Shown piece after piece: positions 10,034 through 35,542 of a stretch of 64,000 nucleotides of DNA. Numbering within the stretch: position 1 is the first letter of the stretch; every line of letters starts with the position of its first letter. The DNA is from Chlorokybus atmophyticus (Eukaryota; Plantae; Mesostigma and Chlorokybus algae). A program made the translations under genes and the position numbers. The stretch covers positions 678,159 through 742,158 of the forward strand of contig RHPI01003156.1 in NCBI GenBank assembly GCA_009103225.1, given 5' to 3'. The notes under the pieces are model-generated. The model did not search any database. It was not told where the DNA came from and saw only the letters and a list, made by a program, of their open reading frames with translations.

Positions 10034-10376
10034 NNNNNNNNNNNNNNNNNNNNNNNNNNNNNNNNNNNNNNNNNNNNNNNNNNNNNNNNNNNNNNNNNNN
10101 NNNNNNNNNNNNNNNNNNNNNNNNNNNNNNNNNNNNNNNNNNNNNNNNNNNNNNNNNNNNNNNNNNNNNNNNNNNNNNNNNNNNNNNNNNNNNNNNNNNN
10201 NNNNNNNNNNNNNNNNNNNNNNNNNNNNNNNNNNNNNNNNNNNNNNNNNNNNNNNNNNNNNNNNNNNNNNNNNNNNNNNNNNNNNNNNNNNNNNNNNNNN
10301 NNNNNNNNNNNNNNNNNNNNNNNNNNNNNNNNNNNNNNNNNNNNNNNNNNNNNNNNNNNNNNNNNNNNNNNNNNNN

Positions 10377-20252: not shown

Positions 20253-23200
20253 TCACCAGTGATCATACCCAACACTCGGTGCCGCAGCAGGTGACGTGTC
20301 GTCCTCCCCGCTAAGCGAGCTCATTATGCCCTGCACGGAGGCGTACGTGCCGAGCACGGCGCTCACGCCTGCAACTACAATGACGGTCCCGCAGGCCACG
20401 CGCTCCCACCGCGCGGCCCAACGACCCGAGAGCTTCAGGTAGCACACGCACGGGAGGACGGCGGAGACGGTGAGGGAGAGGAAGGAGCCGATGAAGGCCA
20501 TCACAAGACCTGAAGAAGGGAGAGTGTATCTGTGTGTCTGTGTGTGTGTGCGCGCGCGCGGGCACGTGCATGCATGCATGCATGTGTGGTGCTTGTGCGC
20601 GTGCGCGTCCGTTTGCACGTGCGCGCGTGTATGCGTGTTGTGGGATGTGGGTGGCGAGACCCGACCAGCAGCGAGCACACATACTCACAACTTGACCAAC
20701 GGTGTTGCCGCACAACCACAAATAGAGGTATCATTTCTCCTCACCGAAGAACGGCACGACAATGGCCGCGAGGGCGGTAGAGGCCACGAGCGCGACGCGT
20801 ATGCAGAGGGACGCCACGTGGTGCGCGGGCGAGTACTCGGCAAATGGCAGGAGCTCCTCGATCGCCATGGCCACGGGAGATACCGTCAGCGCAAACTTCG
20901 ATATCGGGTTCACCACCTGGTTCAAACATCGACACATCAGCAAGGGGAGTGCGATGGAAGAGGGAATACATGGTGTTGATGTGGGTGTTATTGTACCGTG
21001 ATCCATATGGCCACTTTGGACGCCACGCGGTCGGCGGGCAGGTTGAGGGTGATCTGGGAGCTGAGGTCTTCGCCGTACATCATGTAGCCCGCCACAGCCG
21101 TGATGCCGTACAACAACACGCAGATGGTAAAACTGCAACCACAAGTGTCGCTGTCTAATAAGTCTCTTACAAGTCATGATCCACACGTCTTGAGTGTGTG
21201 GCATTTGGTGCATGGCCATTGCGTGGAACCCAAGTAGACCACATATGCGATACAACATGCGATCGCACCTGACATCGAGGATGCGGTTGAACTGCCTCGG
21301 CTTCCTCATCGATTGGTAGATGACTGGAAAGACGGCGTGGCCGGAGAAGCAGAAGCCGACAATGCCGAGCGCTGTTGGCAGTCCCTGCGCACAGCACAGG
21401 AAATGTGTGCTTGCGAGTTCAGCGGCGTGTACATATATTAACTGAGCGGGTTTAAACAGGGCAGTCACCTCCAATCTCAGCAGCGTGCCGGTGTGCGTGA
21501 ACCCCACGCCCTCAAAGGCGCCCACCCAGATCACCATGACCATCATCATCGCAGACGCGAGCACGCCACCAGCTGTGAACACGCGCATACAAACACATTT
21601 TTAACCAGGCCATCAACACAACATACTCACGCGCCCACAACAAGCAGAAAGTATCGGTTGGTTGCGATTGCGATAGCGATTGATTTGGGTGCGGTGCAGC
21701 AAGGCAGATGATACATGTTCCCCACATGTATGCAATAACCACATGTTTGCAAAGTGTACCTGAGAGGTAGGAGAGAACGCTCAAGTCCTTCAGCAGGCAG
21801 CTCGGGAGCACGATGAGCGCCGTGATCAGGACAAACCCGTGCTGCGCAGTGAGATGCAACCCCGCGAGGTCGAAATGCGGGAACAGATCTGCAACATAGA
21901 TGTATGAGATGCATCTTGACGAGGGCTGAAGTCCACTTGTGCCAAGCATGTTGGAATACTCACTGGCGAGGTTGTCTCCCTCCAGGATGAGGAACTCCAC
22001 CGTGCACAGGTACAGCTCCACATACAGCACGATCGCAACGAACATTCTCCTGTGTAACCACCAAGCGCGTGATGCGCTGGTACACATGTTGTGGGTCGCG
22101 CGTGATGCAGTGCGTACCCGTAAACGCCAAAGGCCGCTTCGCCGATGTCGGGGTAGGTGTGAAGCCCCGGCCTGCTGTCCAGACACGCGCGAAGGAGCTT
22201 GCCGGTGTAGCAGCAGATCATGGCGAAAGCAGCCAGCACCAACAGCCCTGAGACGCACCGTCGTCAGCAAGTCATTGATGTTGTCGCACTGTTGTGGCGT
22301 GTATATGGCCACTAGCGCAAATATGACTCAAGTTGCAAAGCACAATGAAAGCACTAGCTTATTGTCAAGTTGTTGTTGTTGTTGTTAGTGTTGCTGCGTT
22401 CGAGCTTGTGATGTGCGTGTGGCGGTGAAGTAGCACTGAGATGCTGGGATGGGATACAGCAGACCAACGGTACAACTACTCACCTGCCCAACCAGCTTGA
22501 GCCAAAGCATACGGCGTGGACAGCACCCCCACACCCGCCAACACGTTGACACCTGCACCACACCATCCACTTTACGCAACCCCAAAACTCATCACTGATC
22601 CCACCAACACGCATTACCATTGAAAGACGCTTGCATGAAGCTGCTGCCAAACTTGCGATCTGGCCGATCAGGCAAGACCGGCCCGTGATAGTGGTAATCA
22701 CCCTCCACCCCGTTCGCGTGGGCACGCCGCACGGGCGGTTTGGGCGGCAACGGTGGCTTCGACGAGGCGTGCGAGGCGAGTGGGGACGGGCGTGAAGAAG
22801 GCGCGGGCGAATCAGGTGCTAAAGAGAAAGGTTGGGTGTCGTCGTAGTAGCCGTCGGCAAAGTCGGATGAGGCCGTGTCGGCGAGAAGAGGCGTGCGGAG
22901 AGTGCTTGTGGAAGTGGAGGTTTGTTGTTGCTGTTGTTGTTGCTCGGAGTCATCGCCGCCCTGAGCCAAGCCATAGCTGCGACCGAGGGAGGGGGAACGG
23001 GCGTACCACTCTGACGAATGCCTGCGCAGAGATGTAGCAATTGTCAATACACATAGGCACGGGCACGCGCATGCGAATACACTCACAAACGTGTGCGCGC
23101 GTACACGCACACACTGGCGTCAACGTACAAGCGCATGCACACACGTGCACACGCGATCACTGTGCGCGCACAACTCCAAGCAGTATCATGTGGAATAAGT

Positions 23201-24530: not shown

Positions 24531-24984
24531 ATGGAGTTGGCCATGGGGCGGCGATCGTCATCAGTTGCAATGTTGGCGCTCCGGGCCATTGTTTGCGCGA
24601 CATTGCTGGTCTCGTTCACAGGTGAGTGAGAGTTGAATGACAGTTGGTTATGGTTGATTTTCTCACAGCTGCAGTTGGATCAAGTAATAGCTGAGTTATG
24701 GCACCTGCGTGAGCTACAATGAAAATTTATCAATAGTAGAGGCCTCACTTGCGGATATTCATCTCACCTGAGTCTAAACTGGTCCAATGCACTATACTTG
24801 GTCCCATAGTTGTACCCTCAATCACCTCTTTCTGCATACTGCGCCTTGCTGCTGATCAACACGGCCACAGTCATGCTGAAAGTTCCATCAGTTCATGATA
24901 AGGTTTAAGTCACCCTACTCAGCAACAGACTGAGGAGTTTAGATGAAACAGTTCAACTTAACCCCAAGACACAAACAATAATCT

Positions 24985-25078
<94 letters not shown>

Positions 25079-28000
25079 NNNNNNNNNNNNNNNNNNNNNN
25101 NNNNNNNNNNNNNNNNNNNNNNNNNNNNNNNNNNNNNNNNNNNNNNNNNNNNNNNNNNNNNNNNNNNNNNNNNNNNNNNNNNNTCCCCCCCCCCCCCCCC
25201 CATTCCCTTCCCGCTCTATGTGTCCCACTGTGTGAAATCTCTCCTTCAACACCATACTTCATGCCCCTGTTGTAACAAAACCCTCTACTAAACACCCCCC
25301 CGCCCCCTTTCTCACCCTGTTAATTCTCCCCTGTTAACCTCTTCCTGTTTGTCCCCAGACGCCTTCCAGGTCCTTTCCATCTCCCGCCCCTCCCCCTCCC
25401 CCTTCGCCGACGCCCTCTTCAACGACACCGCGCTGAGGGGACCGGTGGGAGGGATGGAGGTGGTGGTAGAGGGGACGAGGTTCAGGGAGGAGAGCTTCAC
25501 GGCGACGATGGATAAGAGAAGGGTATGTGGGGGTGGATGGGTGGGTATTGTTGGGTGGGGGATGTTGGGGTGTGTGTGCGTGCACGTATGCGCACAAACA
25601 TCAACACGCACATGTGAAATCTACGTGCGCGCGTGCGCGTGCGTGTGCTTATGTGCCTGTGTGTACATGTAAATTACTGTATGGGTGGAATGTCAAGGCC
25701 TTGTATCGCAGATTGACAGTCAAGTGGTGGACTCTGAGACGGCCCGTGTTTGGATCCCTTCATCAAGAATAGCCAAGACCGCCTTGCTGGAGATCTCCGA
25801 CGGCACGGACGACAACCTCTACTCCGCCACCTTCACCTACGAATGTACGTGTACACGCTTGTGGCCATGCTTCTGTTAGTCAGTAGCATGTGGGTTTGAG
25901 GACGAACACCTTTCCCTTCTCAGACGTGTTGGGTACCGAGTTCAACTCCTCCCTCCTCGCCTTCTACTCCTTCTCCGGCGACCTCAAGTCCGGTCTCAAC
26001 CGGTCTCTCGATGACCGCGAGGGACGCATACCCTCGTCGTACGGACACTACGGACCCAACTACAGCCCGGATCGGAATGGGGTGCCGGACCGAGCGCTGA
26101 TGTTTGCGAGGGGAGAAAGAGTGGAGATGCCGGCCATGCTGGGACAGGTGGGTGGGATGGGTGGGTGGGTGGGTGGGTGGATTTTTATGTGTGTGCGCGT
26201 GCATCTCGTTACCTGTAAAGTGATGTTGTTCTCTGACTTCGTTCGTCTTCGGACATACAGAACTCTTCGTGGACGCTGTGCATGTGGGCATATATTCGCA
26301 GCGGGTCCAATGTGTTGTTTGCCGAGCAGGTGAGCATACCACACTCACAACACATACGCACAACGCTACCAGTGCTTGCATGTAGCAAGTCCCACAACAC
26401 CCACACTCCTCTCCATCACAGGATCACAGCAAGAACCACCGCGTGAACGTCATCTCCATCCTCGACGCGGGTGCTCCCGAGGGCATTATCGAGCTTGACG
26501 GCGTTCCCGTTGGCAACATCACTCTCAACACGTGGCAGTTCATCTGCGTGTCGAGGACAGACTCAACTATCCGTCTCTACGCGCACGGCGACTTGATCGC
26601 TAGCGTGCCTGCGAATATGGATGAGGAGTTGATGAATGTGGTCGCGGAGAAGAGTATGCTGGGAGTGGGACTCGTCGGACAAGTGGATGATGTGTGGGCG
26701 TGGAACAGAGCGCTGAAGGACTATGAAGTCAATGGACTGTATCATACGGAGGGTGAGTTGAGGTGATGTACATATGTGCGTGCGTGCGTACGCACGTATG
26801 GGTGTGGGCGTCGGCGTTGGCGTGTGTTTGGATCTGTGTATGTGTGTGTGGGGAACCAAGCTGCTGACGACATGTCAACAGAGTATGCGGTGGAGTTGGA
26901 TGGTGTTAGCGGCCACTTTGAGGTGTACAGCTCCAGTTCTCAGTCAGTCCTCGACTCCGCTGCCTGGCGCCCAAACTCACGGGTACCCTTTTCCACTCCC
27001 CCCCCCCNNNNNNNNNNNNNNNNNNNNNNNNNNNNNNNNNNNNNNNNNNNNNNNNNNNNNNNNNNNNNNNNNNNNNNNNNNNNNNNNNNNNNNNNNNNNN
27101 NNNNNNNNNNNNNNNNNNNNNNNNNNNNNNNNNNNNNNNNNNNNNNNNNNNNNNNNNNNNNNNNNNNNNNNNNNNNNNNNCCCGCTCACCCTTCTCCTCC
27201 CCCCCTTCTTAGATCACCGTCGAAGCCTGGATCAACCCCGCCATCATCACCGGCACGCACGTCATCCTCGACCAGCCCGTCGCCTCCGGACTCGCGAGCG
27301 GCGTGACTTTGTCTATAGTCAACGGTGGTAAGGTGCGCTTCTCGGTCGTGACCAACAGCGCCCAGACGCAGTACCGCACGGCCACAACGGACGCGGTTGT
27401 GGTTGAAGTAGGGACGTGGGCCAAAATCAGCGCCGTGTATGATACGACAAGCATCACCATCTATGTCGACGGCGTCGTGCAGGTACGGGAGTGAGTCAAC
27501 GAGTGCTTGCGGTGTTGGTTGCGTGTGCACGTGCACTCACTGATAAGTATGTCAGCATGCGTGCGAGGGAGCAAGCGAGTGCATACAATGGTTTTTTATA
27601 GAAAAGCACTGAGCACCACCAAATGCATGCCCAGCATTTGTGTGCACACGACGTTGATGACCACTGTTGTATGCACAGTTGGTTGGTGGAGGCCTTAACT
27701 CGGTGAAGTTCTACACCGTGGCGCCCACTCTCTCCCCCCTACCGATCGAGTTGAGCACGCAGCCGATGCGCCTGGGCAAGAGCGCCGCGGGCGTGGGTGA
27801 CGGGTTCGTCGGCCGGCTGGGCGAGGTCCGCCTCTGGTCGCGAGCACTCTCCACTGCCGATGTCGCCAACATGTGTCCCCTTGCTGGAACTGAGACGGAC
27901 CTGTTTGCTTTGATACGGATGGATGATGGCATGGGCAACAACTACGCTGATGGCAACTCCCAAGGTGAGAGACACACGTACACGCACACAGCCGGGCACG

Positions 28001-31000
28001 CATACGCGCAAGCACACATACACACAACGTGCATGGGTGTGTGGGTGGTGTTTGGGTATGTGGGTGCGTGTGGGCACACACGCATCCACATACGCACATT
28101 TACACACGTAGACGTTTGCTCAACAAATGAACACACGCAAGCAGCAACTGACATCCCTGCTGCGACAGGTGTCTACCTCTGGTTCATCTCTGACCTCCTC
28201 CCGTTCTGGGTCCGCTCTTCTTACTACTCCACCTCGCTCTCCCTCCCGCACTCCACCGTGGACGGTCCCGGCGTCACTGCCGCCAATTCCTCCGTCCCCG
28301 CTTGGTTCGTCGCTCAGACGCGCGGCGAGTGCGGGAAGCTGCGCAAGGAGGGGGGAGATGACCTCCAGGTGGTGCTCGTGGGGCCGTTGGATAGGCATAT
28401 GTACGTTGTGGAAGGGGAGATTGAGGATAATGGAGATGGGACGTATGTTGGGGAGTATGTGCATCATGCGTGCGGACACTACGCTCTGCGCGTCGAAGGG
28501 AAAGAGGTTAGTCAAGTCAGTTGGTTGAGTGGGGGTCAAGGAATTGAGGGCCGCTTTTAGCGTAAATTGAGTTAACTGAGCTCTTTGTCTCACCTTATAC
28601 AGGTTCCGTTTGAGGATCAAAGTGGGCTTCTGATTCGAAGCCAGTCGGCGTACTTCTTCAGCGGGTCTCCGTACAAGGTGTACATCTATCCCGGGTTGAC
28701 CGAAGCCGCCCACACCTTCGCTTATGACGACGAGGACCTCCTCGACAACGACGACCTGGAGACCGCCTACGCGGGGGTGCCCGCCTCGTTCATCGTGCAG
28801 GCGGTGGACAAGTGGGGTTGCGCGCGGATGTCCGGCGGGGACAGCATCGAGGCCATGTTGGAAGGACCATACAACAGTCCCATCCGCGCATCCGTGACGG
28901 ACCTAAGAGATGGACGCTACCTCGTGACATACACGCCCGTTGTACCTGGACCCCACGTACTCAGCGTCACGCTCAACGGCACCGAACACATAGGGACCAA
29001 CAACACGTTCACGCCACGGGAGAAGTGCGGCACCGCCTTTGGAGATGACGGACCGGGAAGCCCGTGGTGCATTCAAGTCAGCGCAGGTACAAACCCACAC
29101 TGCACACATACCCACATACTTCACAAGATCACAGGATATCCACTCACAGCACGAACAATGTGGGCATCTTGTGTGCGACACACACGTGCCCGTGTTACTC
29201 ACTCTCTGTTGTGTTCTAGTTCCTGCAGCACTCCAGCTGGACAACACGGCGAGCGAGGCTTACGTTGAGGTGGACCATGCTGACCCGCTATCCCTCTCCT
29301 CCCCTCCCGATGGCTTCACGCTCGAGGCGTGGGTGAAGCCCCTCGCGGGTGTTAGTGTGGCCACACGCCAGAACATACTCAGCAAAGAGAGCGAGCGCAG
29401 CGGCCATGGCTACTGGTTCGCTTTGGGTTATGTGAATGACACTGCGAGGAACATCTCCGCTGGGTTTTATATCGGCTCGGATACGTATCGGACAATAGAG
29501 AGCGAGTCCACTATCCCCGTCGACGAGTGGACACACGTTGCCGTCACATACACAAAAAAGGTTCTCAGGCTGCTTGTTAACGGAGATACGGTTAAGACCG
29601 AGTCGTGGGGAGGCGCCTCCTCGGTTAGAGAGAACAGTCAGCCTCTCACTATCGGGTGGGGTTTCAACGGTGTCATCGATGAGGTGAAGATTTCTCCTCG
29701 TGTCAAGAGTGAGGAGGACATCATGAACACTATGCATTGTCCCGCCGACTCATCTGTCATAGCGTACTGGGCGTTCAATGAGCAGGAGGGCTTAACCGTA
29801 TACGACGCATCAGACAACGCTTTTGAGGGCAGATTGGTTAACTCTCCCCAAGCTCAGTTAGTTGCCAACCAGGGTGCGAGTACTAATGCCGGTCAGTTAG
29901 AAGGTCCCGCAAGCAGTGTGATGGGTCCTTTTGACCCAACTGTGGGTATCAAATCCAACCTCAACATCACTCTCGTCGACAAGTGCGGCTTGCCCTTCGG
30001 CCTGACCTCCGAGACCGATATCGCCGCGACGGTGTCTTACCTAGACACCGAGCGCCGGGTCGATATCGGCTCCACGTTCCCGAACCTGGTCGCAACCCTA
30101 ATCCAACCCGTGGATATCACCGTATCACCTGACCACCCGGGATGCGGCCTCGTGGGTGAGATATCGGCCTCGTTCACCCCGGCTGCGTGCGGTGCAGCCA
30201 CTGTTGATGTCACTGTGGGTGGAGAGTATATCGGCAGCTCGCCGATATCTGTCAAGGTGGATCCTGGTTTGCTAACTAATTGGGAGCAAACTACAGTTAC
30301 GGGCCTGCGCGATGCAGTGACTGGATTGGAAAGTACTTTTGTGATTGAGGCGAGGGATAAGAGCGGGTGCTTGAGGCCAGATGGATATGATGAGTTTGTT
30401 GTACTTGTCACGCGCACGGCGGTGGATGTCAACGGCACTGAGTCCGATGAAGAACTCACCGGTTCCGATGCAGGTACATAGTGTGTGTGTGTGCATCTCT
30501 GGCACTTGCGCATGCATACGTGCGTGCATATGTGTCTACGTGCGTGCTTGTGCGTGCATACAAGCGCGGGCGTGCTTGTGCGCATGAAGTACACATTGCA
30601 TATAGTTCTTCAACATGATATGTTGCTACCTTTGCGTTACTGACTCTCCACCACGTTCACAGTGTCCTACTGGGCCACCGTCCAGCCCTCCCGCAGCCCC
30701 CTCCACCGCGTTTCCCACACTCCTCCCTCTCCCGGCCTCTACTCCATCAACATCGGTCTCCGTTCCACCAACGGCAGCGTGGTCACTCCCATCACGGGGA
30801 GCCCCTTCACTATCGCGGTGGCCGCCCCAGAATGGCGGAGGTTAGAGACGATGAGAGAGGGTCCGGATGCGAGATATCAAGCGAGTGGGGTGGTGTATGG
30901 GGAGGACTTGTTCGTCGTGAGAGGGTGGGGAGGGGATAAGATGGCGAGGGGGGATACGTGGAGACACACGCTCAAGTGAGTGGTGGTTGGATGGCATTGG

Positions 31001-33566
31001 GAGTGGTGAAGTGTAGTTGCGAGGGGGAAATGAGTGATTGATTGATTGCTGATGGTGTGCAGGAGCAAGCATGCGTGGGCGTATCGGCGTATGATCGAGG
31101 TGACTGACTATGATGGTGACTATGCTGTCGGGGTGACCATTGATACGGTCCCGCTTGTGAGCGGGGGCAAGATGCGCACTGACTGCGCCGATGTCCGCTT
31201 CCAGGTTTGTGTTTGTTGTTGCATTGACAGGAGCGAACTTTGACCCGTGCAAATGCACGCACGCACAACACACAGGCAGAAACACACGCGTACACTTACA
31301 CGCACGCATGCACAAATGCACGCAGACTTCACAACACTGACACCCAACCTGTCTCCCACCTCCCCGCAGAACCCCTCAACGGGTGCCCACATCCCCCACT
31401 GGGTTTCTCCCTCGGGTCTCCCCGGCGGCTGCTCCTCCCCCTCCACCACCTTCTACCTCCGCGCTCCCCACTCTATCGACACCTCCACCGTCGTTGTGGA
31501 GATGCTTTACGGCAACGAGGGCGTGAAGACTCCCCTCGCGGACGCGTCCACATTGTTTGAATTTTATGAGAGCTTCGATGGGAGTCTGGCCTCGAGGTGG
31601 GGGCCCGCGACGCAGGTGTGCGAGTTGGTGGAAAATAATGTCACGGCATTCGCGGTGGATAAGAGCTTCAGAGGGGAAGGGAAGGGGAGCTTGATGGTCG
31701 ACAACATCAACCACCCGGGTGAGTGACGCATGCATACACGTGCGCGTGCACACACACACAAAGCGCGTGTCAGCGTGTATATGCGTTTTTGTTTTTTGTG
31801 TATGTGACGCTCGCATGTTTTGCACTTGTATCGTTGCTTCTTATGTACTACCGCATACAAAAGCGAGCAAGTTGGCACCTCTAATTTAGTTCTTGGAATG
31901 TGCAGCTGGAGCGCTCGCAAGCATAGACTTCACTCCCTTGTCCTCCTACATCATCCGCGGCCACTTTTACGACTCGAACGCCCAATCCGCAAGCCACTGG
32001 ATCAGGTCAGTTGGTCAAATGAAGAGCATCATTACCCCCCGCACCACCACACACACACACAAACCCACACACCTCCTCTCTCACAGCCCCGACTACAACT
32101 GCGACCTCGGCGGTTCTTACGTGGACTTCCTCGCTGTCGGTCTCCAGACGGCCTCTTCCGCGACGCACTACTCGACCTTCAAGCCCGCGCTTGCCAGCAA
32201 TGCCGAGAGAGCGCCCGGGTGGCACGCGTTCGAGATACGGACGGACGAGGTGTCGGAGATTTACGTGGACGACGTGAGGGTCAGGACGACGCCACATGTT
32301 GGTAAGTGGGATGTGGGGAGTCTCTCTTGTGTTGGGCTATTGTTTTTGTAGTAGTTGTTGTTGGTGTTGGTGGTGGTATGCGAGCGAGCGAGCGTGCGTG
32401 CGTGCGCGGGAGCGCGTGTGTGTGTGTGCGTGCGTGCAGATCTCTCTGCTTACAGAAGTGATGTTGTGTGCCTGTGTAGGTGTGACGCAGCGGGTCCACA
32501 TTCGAGGGGGTGACTCCTGGACGCGGAGCGTTGCGTGGTGGGATGCGGTGTTCGTGACGAAATTCAGCAATGACACGGTTGTGTCTGTTGGTGAGGAGGA
32601 GGCTGTCATAAGCGCGCAGCACATGGCGTGGAGCAACACCGCCACGCATCACCTTCAACCCCCAACCCGCCACGCATCGGTATGTTGTGCGTGTGCGTGT
32701 GCGTGTGCATATGCGTGTGCGCGTGCGTGTGCAAATGTCACAAACACACAACATTCTTTCGCTTGCAGGCTGCTGTGCTCAACGGCAGCAACGTGTACCT
32801 CCTCGGCGGTTTTGACGCGCCCGCCGACCACCAAGTGTGGGCGTTGGACCTGGAGAGCAAGTACTGGAGTCAGCCTCAGGTGTGGGGCAGCTTGCGTCCG
32901 GCTGTAAGGCGTGACCACGCTGTCGCGCTAGACACCAACACCAGCGTGGCGTACGTGCTCTTCGGCCGCACCGCCGACGGGCAGGGCTTCGACGACGTGT
33001 GGGCCTTCCACATAAACGACGGCTACTGGTCCCGTGTGGACATTGCCACAACCTCCCCACCCCCGCGCTTCGGACACGCCGCGCATGTGTACAACAACCG
33101 CGTGTACGTATTCGGCGGGTACGTGTTCGGCGTGGCGCCCACAGATGAAGTGTGGGTCCTGGACTTAGCCACATACGCATGGACTGTTATGGAGTCCTCT
33201 GGCCCGTCCCCACACTACTTCGCCTCCACCGCACTCGACGCCAACACCGGCAGCGTGTATGTTCACGGCGGGTTGGGCGAAGACAGCATGCCTATGGCTG
33301 ACCTGTGGAAGTATCAACTTGAAACCAACACCTGGACTGAGGTGAGCAATTGTGTGTTGTGTGTTTTGTGTGAGATGCATACTGATTGTGTACGTGTGTA
33401 TGTAGTCGCTGATAACAACCTATGTTGGCAGGTGGCGCAAAGTGCCATCAGTCCAGGCCTCCTCGATTCCGCGACTATGGTGGTTTACGGTCAGAAGCTG
33501 TTTATCTTTGGCGGGCATGGCAACAACACGTACTCGCAAGACCTGTGGAGCGTCTCCATATACTGA
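24531..33566 (+). CDS. Giant secreted multidomain protein: signal peptide, ~3 LamG/concanavalin-like domains, ~4 filamin-type Ig repeats, Kelch blade, DUF2341-like domain, C-terminal Kelch repeats
   Basis: Exon 1 reads MELAMGRRSSSVAMLALRAIVCATLLVSFTG|gtgagt. LamG motifs: WTLCMW, TVEAWINP, FTLEAWVKP, WTHVAVTY, FNGVIDEV. Filamin motifs: EDNGDGTYVGEY, VTDLRDGRYLVTYTP, GSPFTIAV. DUF2341-like: WAYRRMIEV..DY.V...DT..LVSGGKMRTDCADVRF...MLYGNE...LFEFYESFDG. Kelch: VYLLGG, VLFG, VYVFGG, VYVHGG, LFIFGG. Stop TGA at 33564-33566. Two gaps (~25079-25183, ~27008-27180) hide parts of the gene. Confidence 0.85.
24985..25200. other. Poly-C tract and assembly gap
   Basis: Long C homopolymer adjoining an N run. 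Confidence 0.9.
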
Positions 33567-34151: not shown

Positions 34152-35542
34152 TCACAGGTCAGAGTGTGATCCCGTGTTGTTCTCGTACTCGAGCGCGGCA
34201 GCAGTGGTGGCGTCGTCGAGGGGGTCGTGAGGCGGCGGTTGCGATTGTGATAGCCGCTGGATGAGAGCGTGCGTGCTCACGCGCAGCTCTGACACCGACG
34301 CAGGCGTCACCAGCCGCTCAATGAACTCGGGAAGGGGAGGAGGCGGGGCGGATGACGCTTCCTGCTGTGCGCCTGTTGACTGCGTGCTTGAAGCTGAGGG
34401 GGTTGACGCCTGTCCACCCTGTGATAGTCAATGGCACTTGAGCTCCACAACCGCTTCGTACATGTGTGCGCTCTTGTAGAGATGAGTCGTATAATGCACT
34501 GAGTGAATGCGTATGCTTCTGAGAGTATGGCTATGCTGCTACACTCTCTGCACACTCACAACTATGGGTGGAGGCTTCATGGCTGTGTGGCTACCACATT
34601 GCACGTGAGATTGCACACGAGTGATGAAGCACATCAAGCCACTGACCTGCGACTGTGCTTGGCGTGCCCTGTGATTCTGCATCATCTGGTAGTGCATGCA
34701 AGCCGCATCTGCAATTGCAAGCACATACACCCCGCAATCGACGGAGTTGATCTGCTGCGGCGTGTGTTGACGGCGATGCAGCGGCGGAGACGATGCACCC
34801 AAATACGGCGCAACCGCATCTGCAAGCTGTCGAAAGAGCATTCTTTTCACACATTGTGCTATGCATGCAGTCCGCTTATGGGCTGATCTGTTCTGTGTCA
34901 CTCACTTCGCGAGCTGAAGGTTCATTGGCGTCACCGAGGGAGTCGTAGTACTCAAACACATTGGCTTCTCTGTCGTATATCAGCGTGGACCAGTGCGATC
35001 CACCCTCAGCAGCCTCCACATCCGGGTTGTTGCAAACGGGGAGAACAATCAGCGCGCGTCGGGTGAGCTCGAGGGGCTCAAGTGTGCTCTTTGCGTCTTC
35101 CTCATCGGGACAGTGAGCCACCCAATAAGCCACTGAAGGAGACACTAGCAGCACCTCTTCTAGCCCCTGTGGCAGAGCAGCAGCTGTAGTGAGACTTTGT
35201 ACATACCAGGCTGCACACATGCTCTGGCACAAGGCTTTTGAGCAGTGCGCAATCGTAGCAGCCAGTACTTCAGCTTGCGCACTGAGTAGTCCAGTGTTCA
35301 CTCACAAACATAGGTGCTATTCTGCTTGCATACAAGCGGAGCAACAAAGCCAATCAAACACATGTAGCGCCTGCCTGTTGGCTGTGTAATTGGCTCACCT
35401 GAAACCTTTCCCGCCTGCAGTACTCAAAGTAGAACTCAATGACGGCGTCATTGAGCCAGTCGTCCGTTTTCAGCAGCTCCACATCGCTGTCGTTCAGCAC
35501 CGCATCGCCATAGTTGAGCACACGCTTCGGTTTGGAGCTCAT
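34152..35542 (-). CDS. SENP8: NEDD8-specific protease (SENP8/NEDP1/DEN1, Ulp1/C48 family)
   Basis: MSSKPKRVLNYGDAVL..SDVELLK...WLNDAVIEFYFEY; LPVCNNPDVEAAEGGSHWSTLIY (catalytic His); FEYYDSLG; QQINSVDCGVYVL (catalytic Cys); C-terminal VTPASVSELR; TGA at 34152. Confidence 0.93.

What the first reader, a model, noticed from the sequence alone, without database searches (positions are those of the whole stretch)
24531..33566. Giant secreted LamG-filamin-Kelch-DUF2341 mosaic protein with an architecture I do not recognise
About 20 exons encode, by rough estimate, a ~2000-residue protein with a signal peptide and no obvious C-terminal membrane anchor. It alternates LamG domains with filamin-type Ig repeats carrying extra Cys residues and N-x-S/T sites, then adds Kelch repeats and a DUF2341-like domain. 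Filamin repeats and Kelch propellers of this type are mostly cytoplasmic, and DUF2341 is mainly prokaryotic, so this combination in a secreted protein could be an undescribed algal surface, scale or matrix scaffold. No stops were found in the readable exons.
Basis: partly seen in the sequence, partly recalled or inferred. Interest (0 to 1): 0.75.

Follow-up and report, generated by a model that had tools for sequence, protein, structure and literature searches.

The report
Secreted green-algal lectin-rod protein, propeller head
This is one intact 20-exon gene for a secreted protein of about 1,900 residues, belonging to an unstudied family found so far only in early-branching green algae, in which a sugar-binding-type module sits inside a Kelch propeller; it probably works outside the cell, but its function has not been tested.

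Summary
On the + strand, 24531-33566 is one gene of 20 GT-AG exons with a 5,772-nt coding sequence (1,923 aa). It has a signal peptide, no membrane anchor and no stop codons.

Domain order: signal peptide, TIG, LamG, LamG, filamin x2, LamG, filamin-type Ig x2, then a six-blade Kelch propeller. A DUF2341 + ConA-like jelly-roll module is nested inside blade 1 of the propeller.

Gap 2 lies in an intron and nothing is missing there. Gap 1 lies in intron 1. That is exactly where every complete relative has an extra ~240-residue N-terminal LamG domain, so that domain is either lost here or hidden in the gap.

The architecture is not unique. Full-length collinear relatives of 2,150-2,290 aa exist in Mesostigma, Chloropicon and Cymbomonas (two copies) and in metagenomes. 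Pyramimonas and Tetraselmis are known only from 5'-truncated or partial sequences. Chlorokybus has a divergent paralogue. All are unnamed "hypothetical" database entries, and I found no paper on them.

The best reading is an extracellular protein that binds glycans at several sites and acts as a scaffold. The scale or matrix role is an untested inference.

This gene is a new, unannotated and divergent member of the family. The family itself is an undescribed variant of extracellular mosaic proteins. Interest is moderate.

The parts
24531..24621 (+). Exon 1: start codon and signal peptide; ends in ...SFTG.
   Evidence: It uses the first in-frame ATG. The hydrophobic core scores KD19 2.11. The donor is CAG|GTGAGT and the phase fits exon 2. 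Relatives have signal peptides ending ...A(G/E)ET at the same point.
25079..25183 (.). Assembly gap 1, inside intron 1 (24622-25358, 737 nt).
   Evidence: It is flanked by 93 C and 17 C. Family profile positions 1-243 (N-terminal LamG and linker) have no counterpart anywhere in the window. The domain is therefore either lost or hidden here.
25359..25522 (+). Exon 2: first half of the TIG/IPT Ig-like domain.
   Evidence: Matches family profile positions 244-284. The TIG sub-profile hits E2 and E3 in order. Relatives score on Pfam TIG at 2e-9 to 9e-7.
25712..25844 (+). Exon 3: second half of the TIG domain.
   Evidence: Matches family profile 297-337. The ...FTYE|Y|VLGTE junction matches Mesostigma ...YEYKYVLGEE.
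25924..26147 (+). Exon 4: start of LamG domain 1.
   Evidence: Matches family profile 339-411 at 5.5e-21.
26261..26329 (+). Exon 5: a 23-codon exon inside LamG 1 (NSSWTLCMWAYIRSGSNVLFAEQ).
   Evidence: Found only through tblastn with relatives. Splice sites are ACATACAG| and CAG|GTGAGC, phase 0/0. Matches profile 414-435.
26422..26752 (+). Exon 6: rest of LamG 1.
   Evidence: Pfam Laminin_G_3 at 1.4e-6. Matches profile 436-537 at 4.5e-27.
26882..26982 (+). Exon 7: start of LamG 2.
   Evidence: Matches profile 539-569. The donor is CGG|GTACCC, phase 0.
27008..27180 (.). Assembly gap 2, inside intron 7 (26983-27212).
   Evidence: The family profile is continuous across it, 569 to 571. There is a pyrimidine tract and an AG acceptor at 27212.
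27213..27482 (+). Exon 8: middle of LamG 2.
   Evidence: Pfam Laminin_G_3 at 2.2e-12. Matches profile 571-672.
27679..27964 (+). Exon 9: end of LamG 2.
   Evidence: Pfam Laminin_G_3 at 5.2e-6. Matches profile 686-777.
28169..28506 (+). Exon 10: filamin repeat 1.
   Evidence: Pfam Filamin at 1.5e-8. Matches profile 783-891 at 1.5e-39.
28603..29086 (+). Exon 11: filamin repeat 2.
   Evidence: Pfam Filamin at 4.9e-14. Matches profile 912-1056 at 3.6e-53.
29220..30473 (+). Exon 12: LamG 3, filamin-type Ig 3 and the first part of filamin 4. The acceptor could instead be at 29228, 9 nt downstream and in frame.
   Evidence: Pfam Laminin_G_3 at 3.6e-23 and Filamin at 1.7e-4. Matches profile 1067-1455 at 4.2e-95.
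30663..30975 (+). Exon 13: end of filamin 4, the Kelch closing strand, and blade 1 strands up to ...DTWRHTLK.
   Evidence: Weak Pfam Kelch and Filamin hits. Matches profile 1478-1565 at 1.6e-24. Later blades of the window match the same profile segment.
31063..31204 (+). Exon 14: start of DUF2341 (WAYRRMIEV...).
   Evidence: Matches profile 1570-1615 at 2.5e-14 and insert profile 55-102.
31370..31718 (+). Exon 15: rest of DUF2341 and start of the ConA-like jelly roll.
   Evidence: Pfam DUF2341 at 5e-4. Matches profile 1620-1727.
31906..32005 (+). Exon 16: jelly roll.
   Evidence: Matches profile 1736-1761.
32087..32301 (+). Exon 17: jelly roll.
   Evidence: Matches profile 1782-1836.
32480..32679 (+). 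Exon 18: end of the jelly roll, last strand of Kelch blade 1 (...AWSNTA) and start of blade 2 (PPTRHAS).
   Evidence: Matches profile 1844-1908 at 5.7e-14.
32769..33341 (+). Exon 19: Kelch blades 2-5.
   Evidence: Pfam Kelch families at 1.8e-46. Matches profile 1943-2110.
33432..33566 (+). Exon 20: Kelch blade 6 and the TGA stop; ends ...QDLWSVSIY.
   Evidence: Matches profile 2124-2155, the profile's last position. Relatives end ...DLWSLAVY or ...GDLWSSAIY.

Best explanation
Positions 24531-33566 (+) are one intact 20-exon gene. It encodes a secreted, anchor-less protein of 1,923 residues, as far as the assembly shows.

It is a divergent member of a conserved family of early-branching green algae. 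The layout is:
- a signal peptide;
- a rod of five Ig-type domains (TIG plus four filamin-type) interspersed with three LamG jelly rolls;
- a C-terminal six-blade Kelch propeller.

The first blade of the propeller is interrupted by a compact DUF2341 + ConA-like jelly-roll module.

Shown here: the gene structure, the domains, the family, and the nesting. The nesting is shown by profile collinearity in the window and by structure models of relatives.

Inferred: the protein is exported. It uses its four lectin-type jelly rolls, and perhaps the propeller, to bind glycans or glycoproteins of the cell covering (wall, sheath, mucilage or zoospore scales). The Ig domains would act as spacers. It would thus be a scaffold or cross-linker that binds at several sites, not an enzyme.
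For: Single gene:
- tblastn with eight full-length relatives is collinear from 25926 to 33563.
- A family profile of 2,155 positions matches exons 2-20 in order, from position 244 to 2155. It fits within a few residues at almost every junction; the one larger shortfall is about 18 positions at E18/E19, a variable stretch in relatives.

Intact and constrained:
- No stops, and every intron is GT-AG.
- Of 225 aligned family-invariant positions, 188 are identical in the window.
- 11 of 13 invariant Cys align as Cys. The other two look like alignment slips.

Secreted:
- A hydrophobic N-terminus and no other hydrophobic segment.
- Relatives start with typical signal peptides and all end at the same ...DLWSxxVY.

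Domains: Pfam.

Nested insertion:
- The profile segment before the insert is also matched by later Kelch blades of the window.
- In the AF2 model of relative P0196 (pLDDT 77), solved six-blade propellers align from residue 572-576 to 1191 with only about 255 aligned residues. Examples are KLHDC2 6do4_B (Z 26.0, rmsd 2.8 A, 253 aligned) and LZTR1 9mey_B (Z 25.1).

Fold of the insert:
- Its model has pLDDT 82.9 and pTM 0.85.
- It matches ConA-like lectin/glucanase folds: 5joz_B at Z 15.6, GH16 enzymes at Z 14-15, the Vibrio cholerae sialidase lectin wing at Z 14.0, and legume lectin, ERGIC-53 and calreticulin at Z 12-13.
- It lacks the GH16 catalytic motif.
Against: - There are no expression, localisation or binding data for any member.
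- The signal peptide was judged by hydrophobicity and homology, not by a trained predictor, and its h-region contains an Arg.
- Fold matches are generic: all ConA-like families tie at Z 12-15. They do not identify a ligand.
- The window's copy sits on a long branch (2.44 substitutions per site). It also lacks the N-terminal LamG that all complete relatives have. Its role may therefore have shifted, or the model may be incomplete at gap 1.
- The 3D models are of relatives (30-50% identical), not of this protein.
Confidence: 0.6

Rival explanations
1. The gene model is incomplete at its 5' end. Exons for the family's N-terminal LamG domain (about 240 residues) lie in the unread stretch of gap 1, so the true protein has about 2,150 residues like its relatives.
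For: - All complete relatives have this domain directly after the signal peptide.
- The window lacks it exactly at the intron that holds gap 1.
- Intron 1 is 737 nt, against 79-230 nt for the other 18 introns.
- Poly-C at both contig ends may be a sequencing artefact, so the 105-N estimate may be wrong.
Against: - All four gaps in the window sit in simple repeats and are given sizes of 1-343 nt. They look like short unresolved repeats.
- About 720 nt of exon plus introns would not fit the estimate.
- No remnant of the domain is seen in the 632 read bases of intron 1.
Confidence: 0.4
2. The protein is a secreted enzyme, not a scaffold. The Kelch propeller could work as a sugar-acid mutarotase or an oxidase. 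The jelly roll could work as a glycanase or lyase on wall or scale polysaccharide.
For: - Kelch exons also hit PF24996 NANM, the sialic-acid mutarotase propeller, at 4e-10.
- The insert's fold matches include GH16 glycanases, alginate lyases and sialidase-associated domains.
Against: - The NANM score of 39.5 bits is below its 45-bit cut-off, and generic Kelch families score far higher.
- No hits to the glyoxal/galactose oxidase domains PF07250 or PF09118.
- The propeller has six blades. Galactose oxidase has seven (my own knowledge).
- No ExDxxE motif in the window. Among 15 relatives the pattern occurs only once, unconserved, in P0196.
- The best solved matches of the propeller are protein-binding adaptors.
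Confidence: 0.12
3. The protein is a soluble recognition or adhesion ligand between cells, such as gametes, zoospores or cells of the sarcinoid packet. It would act through a membrane partner and would not be a structural matrix component.
For: - Filamin-type Ig repeats occur in the plant gamete-attachment protein GEX2. PF23616 Ig_GEX2_N hits relative P0026 at 4.3e-6.
- TIG, LamG and propeller domains are typical of animal adhesion and guidance proteins (my own knowledge).
- The window's copy is fast-evolving.
Against: - No membrane anchor and no known partner.
- The family is also present in Chloropicon, for which no flagellate or sexual stage is known to me.
- The GEX2 hit is weak and covers one Ig domain only.
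Confidence: 0.15
4. The region holds two or more genes, or a decaying pseudogene.
For: The copy is on a long branch and lacks the N-terminal LamG.
Against: - All 19 splice junctions keep the reading frame, and the coding sequence is 5,772 nt without a stop.
- The match to the family profile is collinear, with no internal start or signal peptide.
- 84% of the aligned invariant positions are kept.
Confidence: 0.03

Closest known systems
Uncharacterised green-algal orthologues: Mesostigma viride Mv19498-RA.1 (2,256 aa), Chloropicon primus QDZ22519.1 / A0A5B8MPT2 (2,153 aa), Cymbomonas tetramitiformis CYMTET_9115 and CYMTET_42004, Pyramimonas MMETSP1081 CAMPEP_0196599450, Tetraselmis sp. GSL018 A0A061RIZ3 (partial)
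   Same: - The same order of TIG, LamG, filamin, Kelch and the nested DUF2341 + jelly-roll module over the whole length.
- The same C-terminal end (...DLWSxxVY).
- The same invariant cysteines and a signal peptide.
   Different: - Only 30-44% identical to the window's exons, and the window sits on a long branch.
- The window lacks, or hides in gap 1, the N-terminal LamG domain.
- None of these proteins has a studied function, so the comparison gives no mechanism.
Chlorokybus atmophyticus Chlat1 Chrsp4S06411 (P0202, 2,826 aa)
   Same: It carries the LamG, filamin, Kelch and insert modules, and it comes from the genus that earlier notes assign to this genome.
   Different: - It is a paralogue, not this gene: 25-37% identity to the window's exons.
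- It has extra Gal_Lectin and PA14 domains and does not end in ...WSxxVY.
Attractin / MEGF8 (animal extracellular Kelch-propeller mosaic proteins)
   Same: An extracellular Kelch beta-propeller combined with lectin-type and other adhesion modules. Pfam PF24981 Beta-prop_ATRN-LZTR1 hits at 7e-34.
   Different: - No CUB, EGF, PSI or C-type lectin domains and no membrane helix here.
- To my knowledge those proteins have no domain nested in a blade.
- The propeller's sequence similarity is generic to Kelch.
Prokaryotic DUF2341-LamG surface proteins (e.g. MEM0360148.1, Candidatus Diapherotrites archaeon, P0121)
   Same: DUF2341 next to ConA-like/LamG jelly rolls in very large exported proteins.
   Different: - In the algal family the module sits inside a Kelch blade of a eukaryotic, intron-containing gene.
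- Similarity is limited to about 100 profile positions (1.2e-19).
Filamin / Dictyostelium gelation factor (ABP-120)
   Same: The Ig-type rod repeats are recognisably filamin repeats (1wlh_A at 1.5e-21 to the Mesostigma relative).
   Different: There is no calponin-homology actin-binding domain. The protein has a signal peptide, conserved cysteines and sequons, so it is not a cytoskeletal cross-linker.

Membership tests
Green-algal TIG-LamG-filamin-Kelch(DUF2341) family (Mv19498 / A0A5B8MPT2 type) | Collinear similarity over the whole length. | tested here: met
   Exons 2-20 match family profile positions 244-2155 in order. tblastn with relatives is collinear.
Green-algal TIG-LamG-filamin-Kelch(DUF2341) family (Mv19498 / A0A5B8MPT2 type) | DUF2341 + jelly-roll module nested in Kelch blade 1. 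| tested here: met
   The insert profile hits exons 13-18 in order, positions 3-392 of 393. The module is found whole only in family members among about 200 proteins. Structure models of relatives support the nesting.
Green-algal TIG-LamG-filamin-Kelch(DUF2341) family (Mv19498 / A0A5B8MPT2 type) | N-terminal LamG domain directly after the signal peptide. | tested here: not met
   The N-terminal profile has no hit in the window (best iE 0.84, to a different LamG). The domain may be hidden in gap 1, so this is a variant or an assembly defect, not grounds for exclusion.
Green-algal TIG-LamG-filamin-Kelch(DUF2341) family (Mv19498 / A0A5B8MPT2 type) | Signal peptide and a conserved C-terminal end ...DLWSxxVY with no anchor. 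| tested here: met
   Exon 1 has KD19 2.11 and no other segment exceeds 1.27. The window ends ...QDLWSVSIY, as relatives do.
Filamins (actin cross-linkers) | N-terminal calponin-homology actin-binding domain; cytosolic. | tested here: not met
   No CH domain in any exon or relative. A signal peptide is present.
BTB-Kelch / KLHDC ubiquitin-ligase adaptors | BTB/BACK domain or cullin box next to the propeller. | tested here: not met
   No BTB or BACK Pfam hit. UniRef's "Btb poz" name for the Tetraselmis fragment is not backed by Pfam. The structural match to KLHDC2 is at fold level only.
Galactose/glyoxal oxidase (radical copper oxidases) | Seven-blade propeller with Glyoxal_oxid_N and DUF1929 domains. 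| tested here: not met
   No PF07250 or PF09118 hits. Six blades were counted in the sequence, and the best structural matches are six-blade propellers.
GH16 glycoside hydrolases | Catalytic ExDxxE motif on the jelly roll. | tested here: not met
   The motif is absent from exons 14-18. Among 15 relatives the pattern occurs only once, unconserved (EYDDFE in P0196). The fold match is at Z 14-15.
Attractin/MEGF8 | CUB, EGF, PSI and C-type lectin modules and a transmembrane helix. | tested here: not met
   None of these Pfam families was found. No hydrophobic segment other than the signal peptide.
Plant GEX2 gamete-attachment proteins | Filamin-type Ig ectodomain on a transmembrane anchor; gamete-specific expression. 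| tested here: inconclusive
   Only a weak Ig_GEX2_N hit in one relative (4.3e-6). There is no anchor here. Expression cannot be tested with these tools.

The most novel reading that the evidence does not exclude
The family is the long-sought protein organiser of the organic body scales and thecae of early green algae. [quoted passage not shown]

The known carriers fit in part:
- Pyramimonas, Cymbomonas and Mesostigma bear scales.
- Tetraselmis has a theca built with the same 2-keto sugar acids as scales.
- Chlorokybus has scaly zoospores.
- No member turned up among the named hits from land plants or core chlorophytes.
- Chloropicon, with no known scales, is an exception.
Probability: 0.1. 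Interest if true: 0.75.

Novelty: new variant of a known kind. Interest (0 to 1): 0.45.

Why it matters
The extracellular matrix of the earliest-branching green algae is poorly known at the protein level. A 2023 review (PMC10762512) states that the chemistry and role of the scales of Chlorokybus, Coleochaete and Chara motile cells are unknown.

This family is a conserved, single- or low-copy, secreted protein of about 2,000 residues. It occurs in both chlorophyte and streptophyte early lineages, and I found it in no named land plant or core chlorophyte. That makes it a concrete candidate for an ancestral matrix component of green plants that was later lost.

It is also a clear case of a domain pair (DUF2341 + jelly roll, otherwise mostly prokaryotic) nested inside a blade of a Kelch propeller. 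That gives DUF2341 a structural context.

For genome annotation, the gene appears to be missing from the protein sets searched. Its 5' end needs checking across the assembly gap.

Tried and rejected
- The search for homologous proteins with the Kelch exon returned only generic Kelch proteins of 183-334 aa because of the length filter.
- The same tool with the whole-family alignment A1 was swamped by bacterial LamG proteins and retrieved only Mesostigma. Restricting the query to the insert module worked.
- Profile and sequence searches of solved structures gave only Kelch, filamin and pappalysin-LamG hits. Nothing matched DUF2341.
On P0056 1430-1785 it gave only leads below 0.9: DUF2341, DUF6250 and sialidase-like CBM.
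- The E12 tree did not resolve where the window's copy belongs.
The source organisms of the metagenome and Logan members, and their gene neighbourhoods, therefore could not be read.
- I found no N-terminal LamG remnant upstream, either by tblastn at E<=20 or with the family's N-terminal profile.
- My by-eye guess that the downstream minus-strand ORF 34876-35301 is a Ulp1-type protease got no Pfam support.
- I did not verify that the genome is Chlorokybus. The only Chlorokybus protein found is a paralogue.
Exons were searched one by one by reference and scored singly against the family profile. The 3D models are of relatives.
Full report
**What is in the sequence**

The + strand between 24531 and 33566 has a chain of stop-free stretches separated by short CA/TG-rich introns. 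I scanned the stretches one by one, by reference, against Pfam. The hits were:
- Laminin_G_3 in three places (1.4e-6; 2.2e-12 with 5.2e-6 for its C-terminal part; 3.6e-23).
- Filamin repeats at 1.5e-8 and 4.9e-14, plus two weak hits.
- A strong Kelch propeller (1.8e-46).
- DUF2341 at 5e-4, below Pfam's own cut-off.

**Gene model**

I paired GT donors with AG acceptors under frame constraints. I then corrected the model with relatives. The result is 20 exons with a 5,772-nt coding sequence and 1,923 codons before the TGA at 33564-33566. One 69-nt exon (26261-26329) was found only because relatives aligned there.

A profile built from seven full-length relatives has 2,155 positions. It matches exons 2 to 20 in strict order from position 244 to 2155, and adjacent exons abut within a few profile positions at almost every junction. 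The one larger shortfall is about 18 positions between E18 and E19, a variable stretch in relatives. This is the main evidence that the region is one gene and that no internal exon is missing.

Exons were searched singly by reference and scored singly against the profile.

**The two assembly gaps**

Gap 27008-27180 is inside intron 7. Exon 7 ends at a phase-0 donor (26983). Exon 8 starts after a pyrimidine tract and an AG at 27212, also phase 0. The family profile runs 539-569 and then 571-672, so nothing coding is lost.

Gap 25079-25183 is inside intron 1, within a poly-C tract of 93 C before it and 17 C after it. Every complete relative has about 240 residues between the signal peptide and the TIG domain: a LamG domain plus a linker. 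The window has no trace of this domain anywhere.
- For hidden exons: intron 1 is 737 nt, while the other 18 introns are 79-230 nt.
- For a true loss: all four gaps of the window lie in simple repeats, with estimated sizes of 1-343 nt.

I cannot decide between the two. I put hidden exons at about 40%.

**Secretion**

Exon 1 starts at the first in-frame ATG and encodes MELAMGRRSSSVAMLALRAIVCATLLVSFTG. Its 19-residue hydropathy maximum is 2.11, and no other exon exceeds 1.27. Relatives begin with typical signal peptides that end ...A(G/E)ET at the equivalent point. All of them end, like the window, at ...DLWSxxVY. No trained signal-peptide predictor was available. The model has 18 Cys and 19 N-x-S/T sites.

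**The family**

A full HMMER scan of 1.84 billion representative proteins with exon 12 found no near-identical protein; the best hits were 33-37% identical. Seven clusters aligned over the whole exon. Pfam shows that these clusters share the window's entire architecture. Their sources are:
- Mesostigma viride Mv19498-RA.1;
- a Pyramimonas MMETSP transcript;
- Chloropicon primus QDZ22519.1 / A0A5B8MPT2;
- a partial Tetraselmis sequence;
- metagenome and Logan sequences.

A search restricted to the insert module added two Cymbomonas tetramitiformis proteins, further metagenome members, and Chlorokybus atmophyticus Chrsp4S06411. The Chlorokybus protein is a divergent paralogue with extra Gal_Lectin and PA14 domains, not this gene.

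One cluster of 70 marine-metagenome sequences is 66% identical to Chloropicon. One Logan member is 61% identical to Tetraselmis.

All named members are green algae of early-branching lineages on both the chlorophyte and the streptophyte side. None of the named hits is from a land plant or a core chlorophyte. That absence is only as good as the top-150 list and the names available. No paper in the library mentions the accession numbers or the domain combination.

**Is this copy functional?**

Of the 225 aligned positions that are invariant in seven relatives, 188 are identical here. Eleven of 13 invariant cysteines align as Cys, and the other two look like local alignment slips (PGGC and NCDL are present). 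The copy is nevertheless the longest branch in a tree of the exon-12 region, and its position is unresolved.

**The nested module**

Exon 13 ends with a Kelch blade (…ARYQASGVVYGEDLFVVRGWGG…DTWRHTLK). Exon 14 opens with the DUF2341 start (WAYRRMIEV…). Exon 18 ends with …AWSNTA…PPTRHAS, which runs into the next blade's AAVLNGSNVYLLGG in exon 19. By sequence, then, about 330 residues sit between the third and fourth strands of blade 1. One blade precedes the insert and five follow it.

Three results support this:
- The profile segment before the insert is matched by later blades of the window.
- An AlphaFold2 model of relative P0196 has a mean pLDDT of 77. Solved six-blade propellers align to it from residue 572-576 to 1191 with only about 255 aligned residues, for example KLHDC2 6do4_B (Z 26.0, rmsd 2.8 A) and LZTR1 9mey_B (Z 25.1).
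- The insert modelled alone, from the metatranscriptome-like contig L001, is compact: pLDDT 82.9 and pTM 0.85.

Residues ~103-317 of the insert model form a ConA-like jelly roll. The matches are a GH43 C-terminal domain (5joz_B, Z 15.6), GH16 glucanases (Z 14-15), the Vibrio cholerae sialidase lectin wing (Z 14.0), and legume lectin, ERGIC-53 and calreticulin (Z 12-13). These scores are tied, so only the fold class is established. The GH16 catalytic motif is absent from the window's exons and is not conserved in relatives: the pattern occurs once, in P0196.

**How it most likely works**

- Shown: an exported, anchor-less chain of five Ig-type domains and four lectin-type jelly rolls, ending in a propeller.
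- Inferred: it binds carbohydrate-rich material of the cell covering at several sites and links or spaces it, with the Ig domains acting as a rod.

The rivals are an enzyme, a soluble adhesion ligand, and an incomplete 5' end. Each is given with its odds in the Rival explanations section. Two genes or a pseudogene is very unlikely.

**Context and limits**

Earlier AI notes on this genome call it Chlorokybus. My data are compatible with that: the best full-length match is Mesostigma, and a Chlorokybus paralogue exists. I did not verify it, and this gene was not found in any protein set searched.

The metagenome members could therefore not be placed, nor their neighbourhoods read.

**Verdict**

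The gene is a new, divergent and apparently unannotated member of a conserved but unstudied green-algal family. The family's architecture, a lectin/Ig rod with a propeller that carries a nested DUF2341-jelly-roll module, is an undescribed variant of extracellular mosaic proteins.

Noticed in passing
window 24986-25078 and 25185-25201; also 10034-10376, 18445, 27008-27180: All four assembly gaps of the window sit in simple repeats: (CA)n/(GA)n, (CT)n, a 93-nt and a 17-nt poly-C, and a C-run. The long poly-C at both contig ends around gap 1 may be a sequencing artefact, not real sequence.
   Followed up: partly
window 24619-24630: Exon 1 ends ...TG|GTGAGTGA. Read through, it gives ...SFTGE*. Relatives' mature N-termini start with (A/G)ET... 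of the N-terminal LamG at this very point, so the first intron seems to sit exactly where the missing domain begins.
   Followed up: partly
window 29219 / 29228: Two in-frame AG acceptors lie 9 nt apart at the start of exon 12 (TTCTAG|TTCCTGCAG|). Either fits, giving possible alternative isoforms that differ by 3 residues.
   Followed up: no
window 20731-21588 (- strand): An upstream ORF piece hits Pfam Aa_trans (amino-acid transporter) at 3.7e-11. It is probably an exon of the neighbouring gene on the opposite strand.
   Followed up: no
P0202 (Chlorokybus atmophyticus Chlat1 Chrsp4S06411, 2,826 aa): A paralogue of the family carries additional Gal_Lectin, PA14 and Laminin_G_1 domains and has a different C-terminus. 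The family has therefore diversified within Chlorokybus.
   Followed up: partly
L001 (contig Ga0138264_1192791), 384-6853: The N-terminal and C-terminal parts of the P0195-type ORF lie in different reading frames on this contig. Residue 1 is in frame 3 and residue 1574 is in frame 2, so the contig has a frameshift relative to the deposited protein.
   Followed up: no
window 24622-33431, introns of this gene: Most introns are 79-230 nt and rich in CACACA/GTGTGT-type tracts. In wrong frames these give long runs of H/T/C/V codons and many spurious ORFs on both strands.
   Followed up: no
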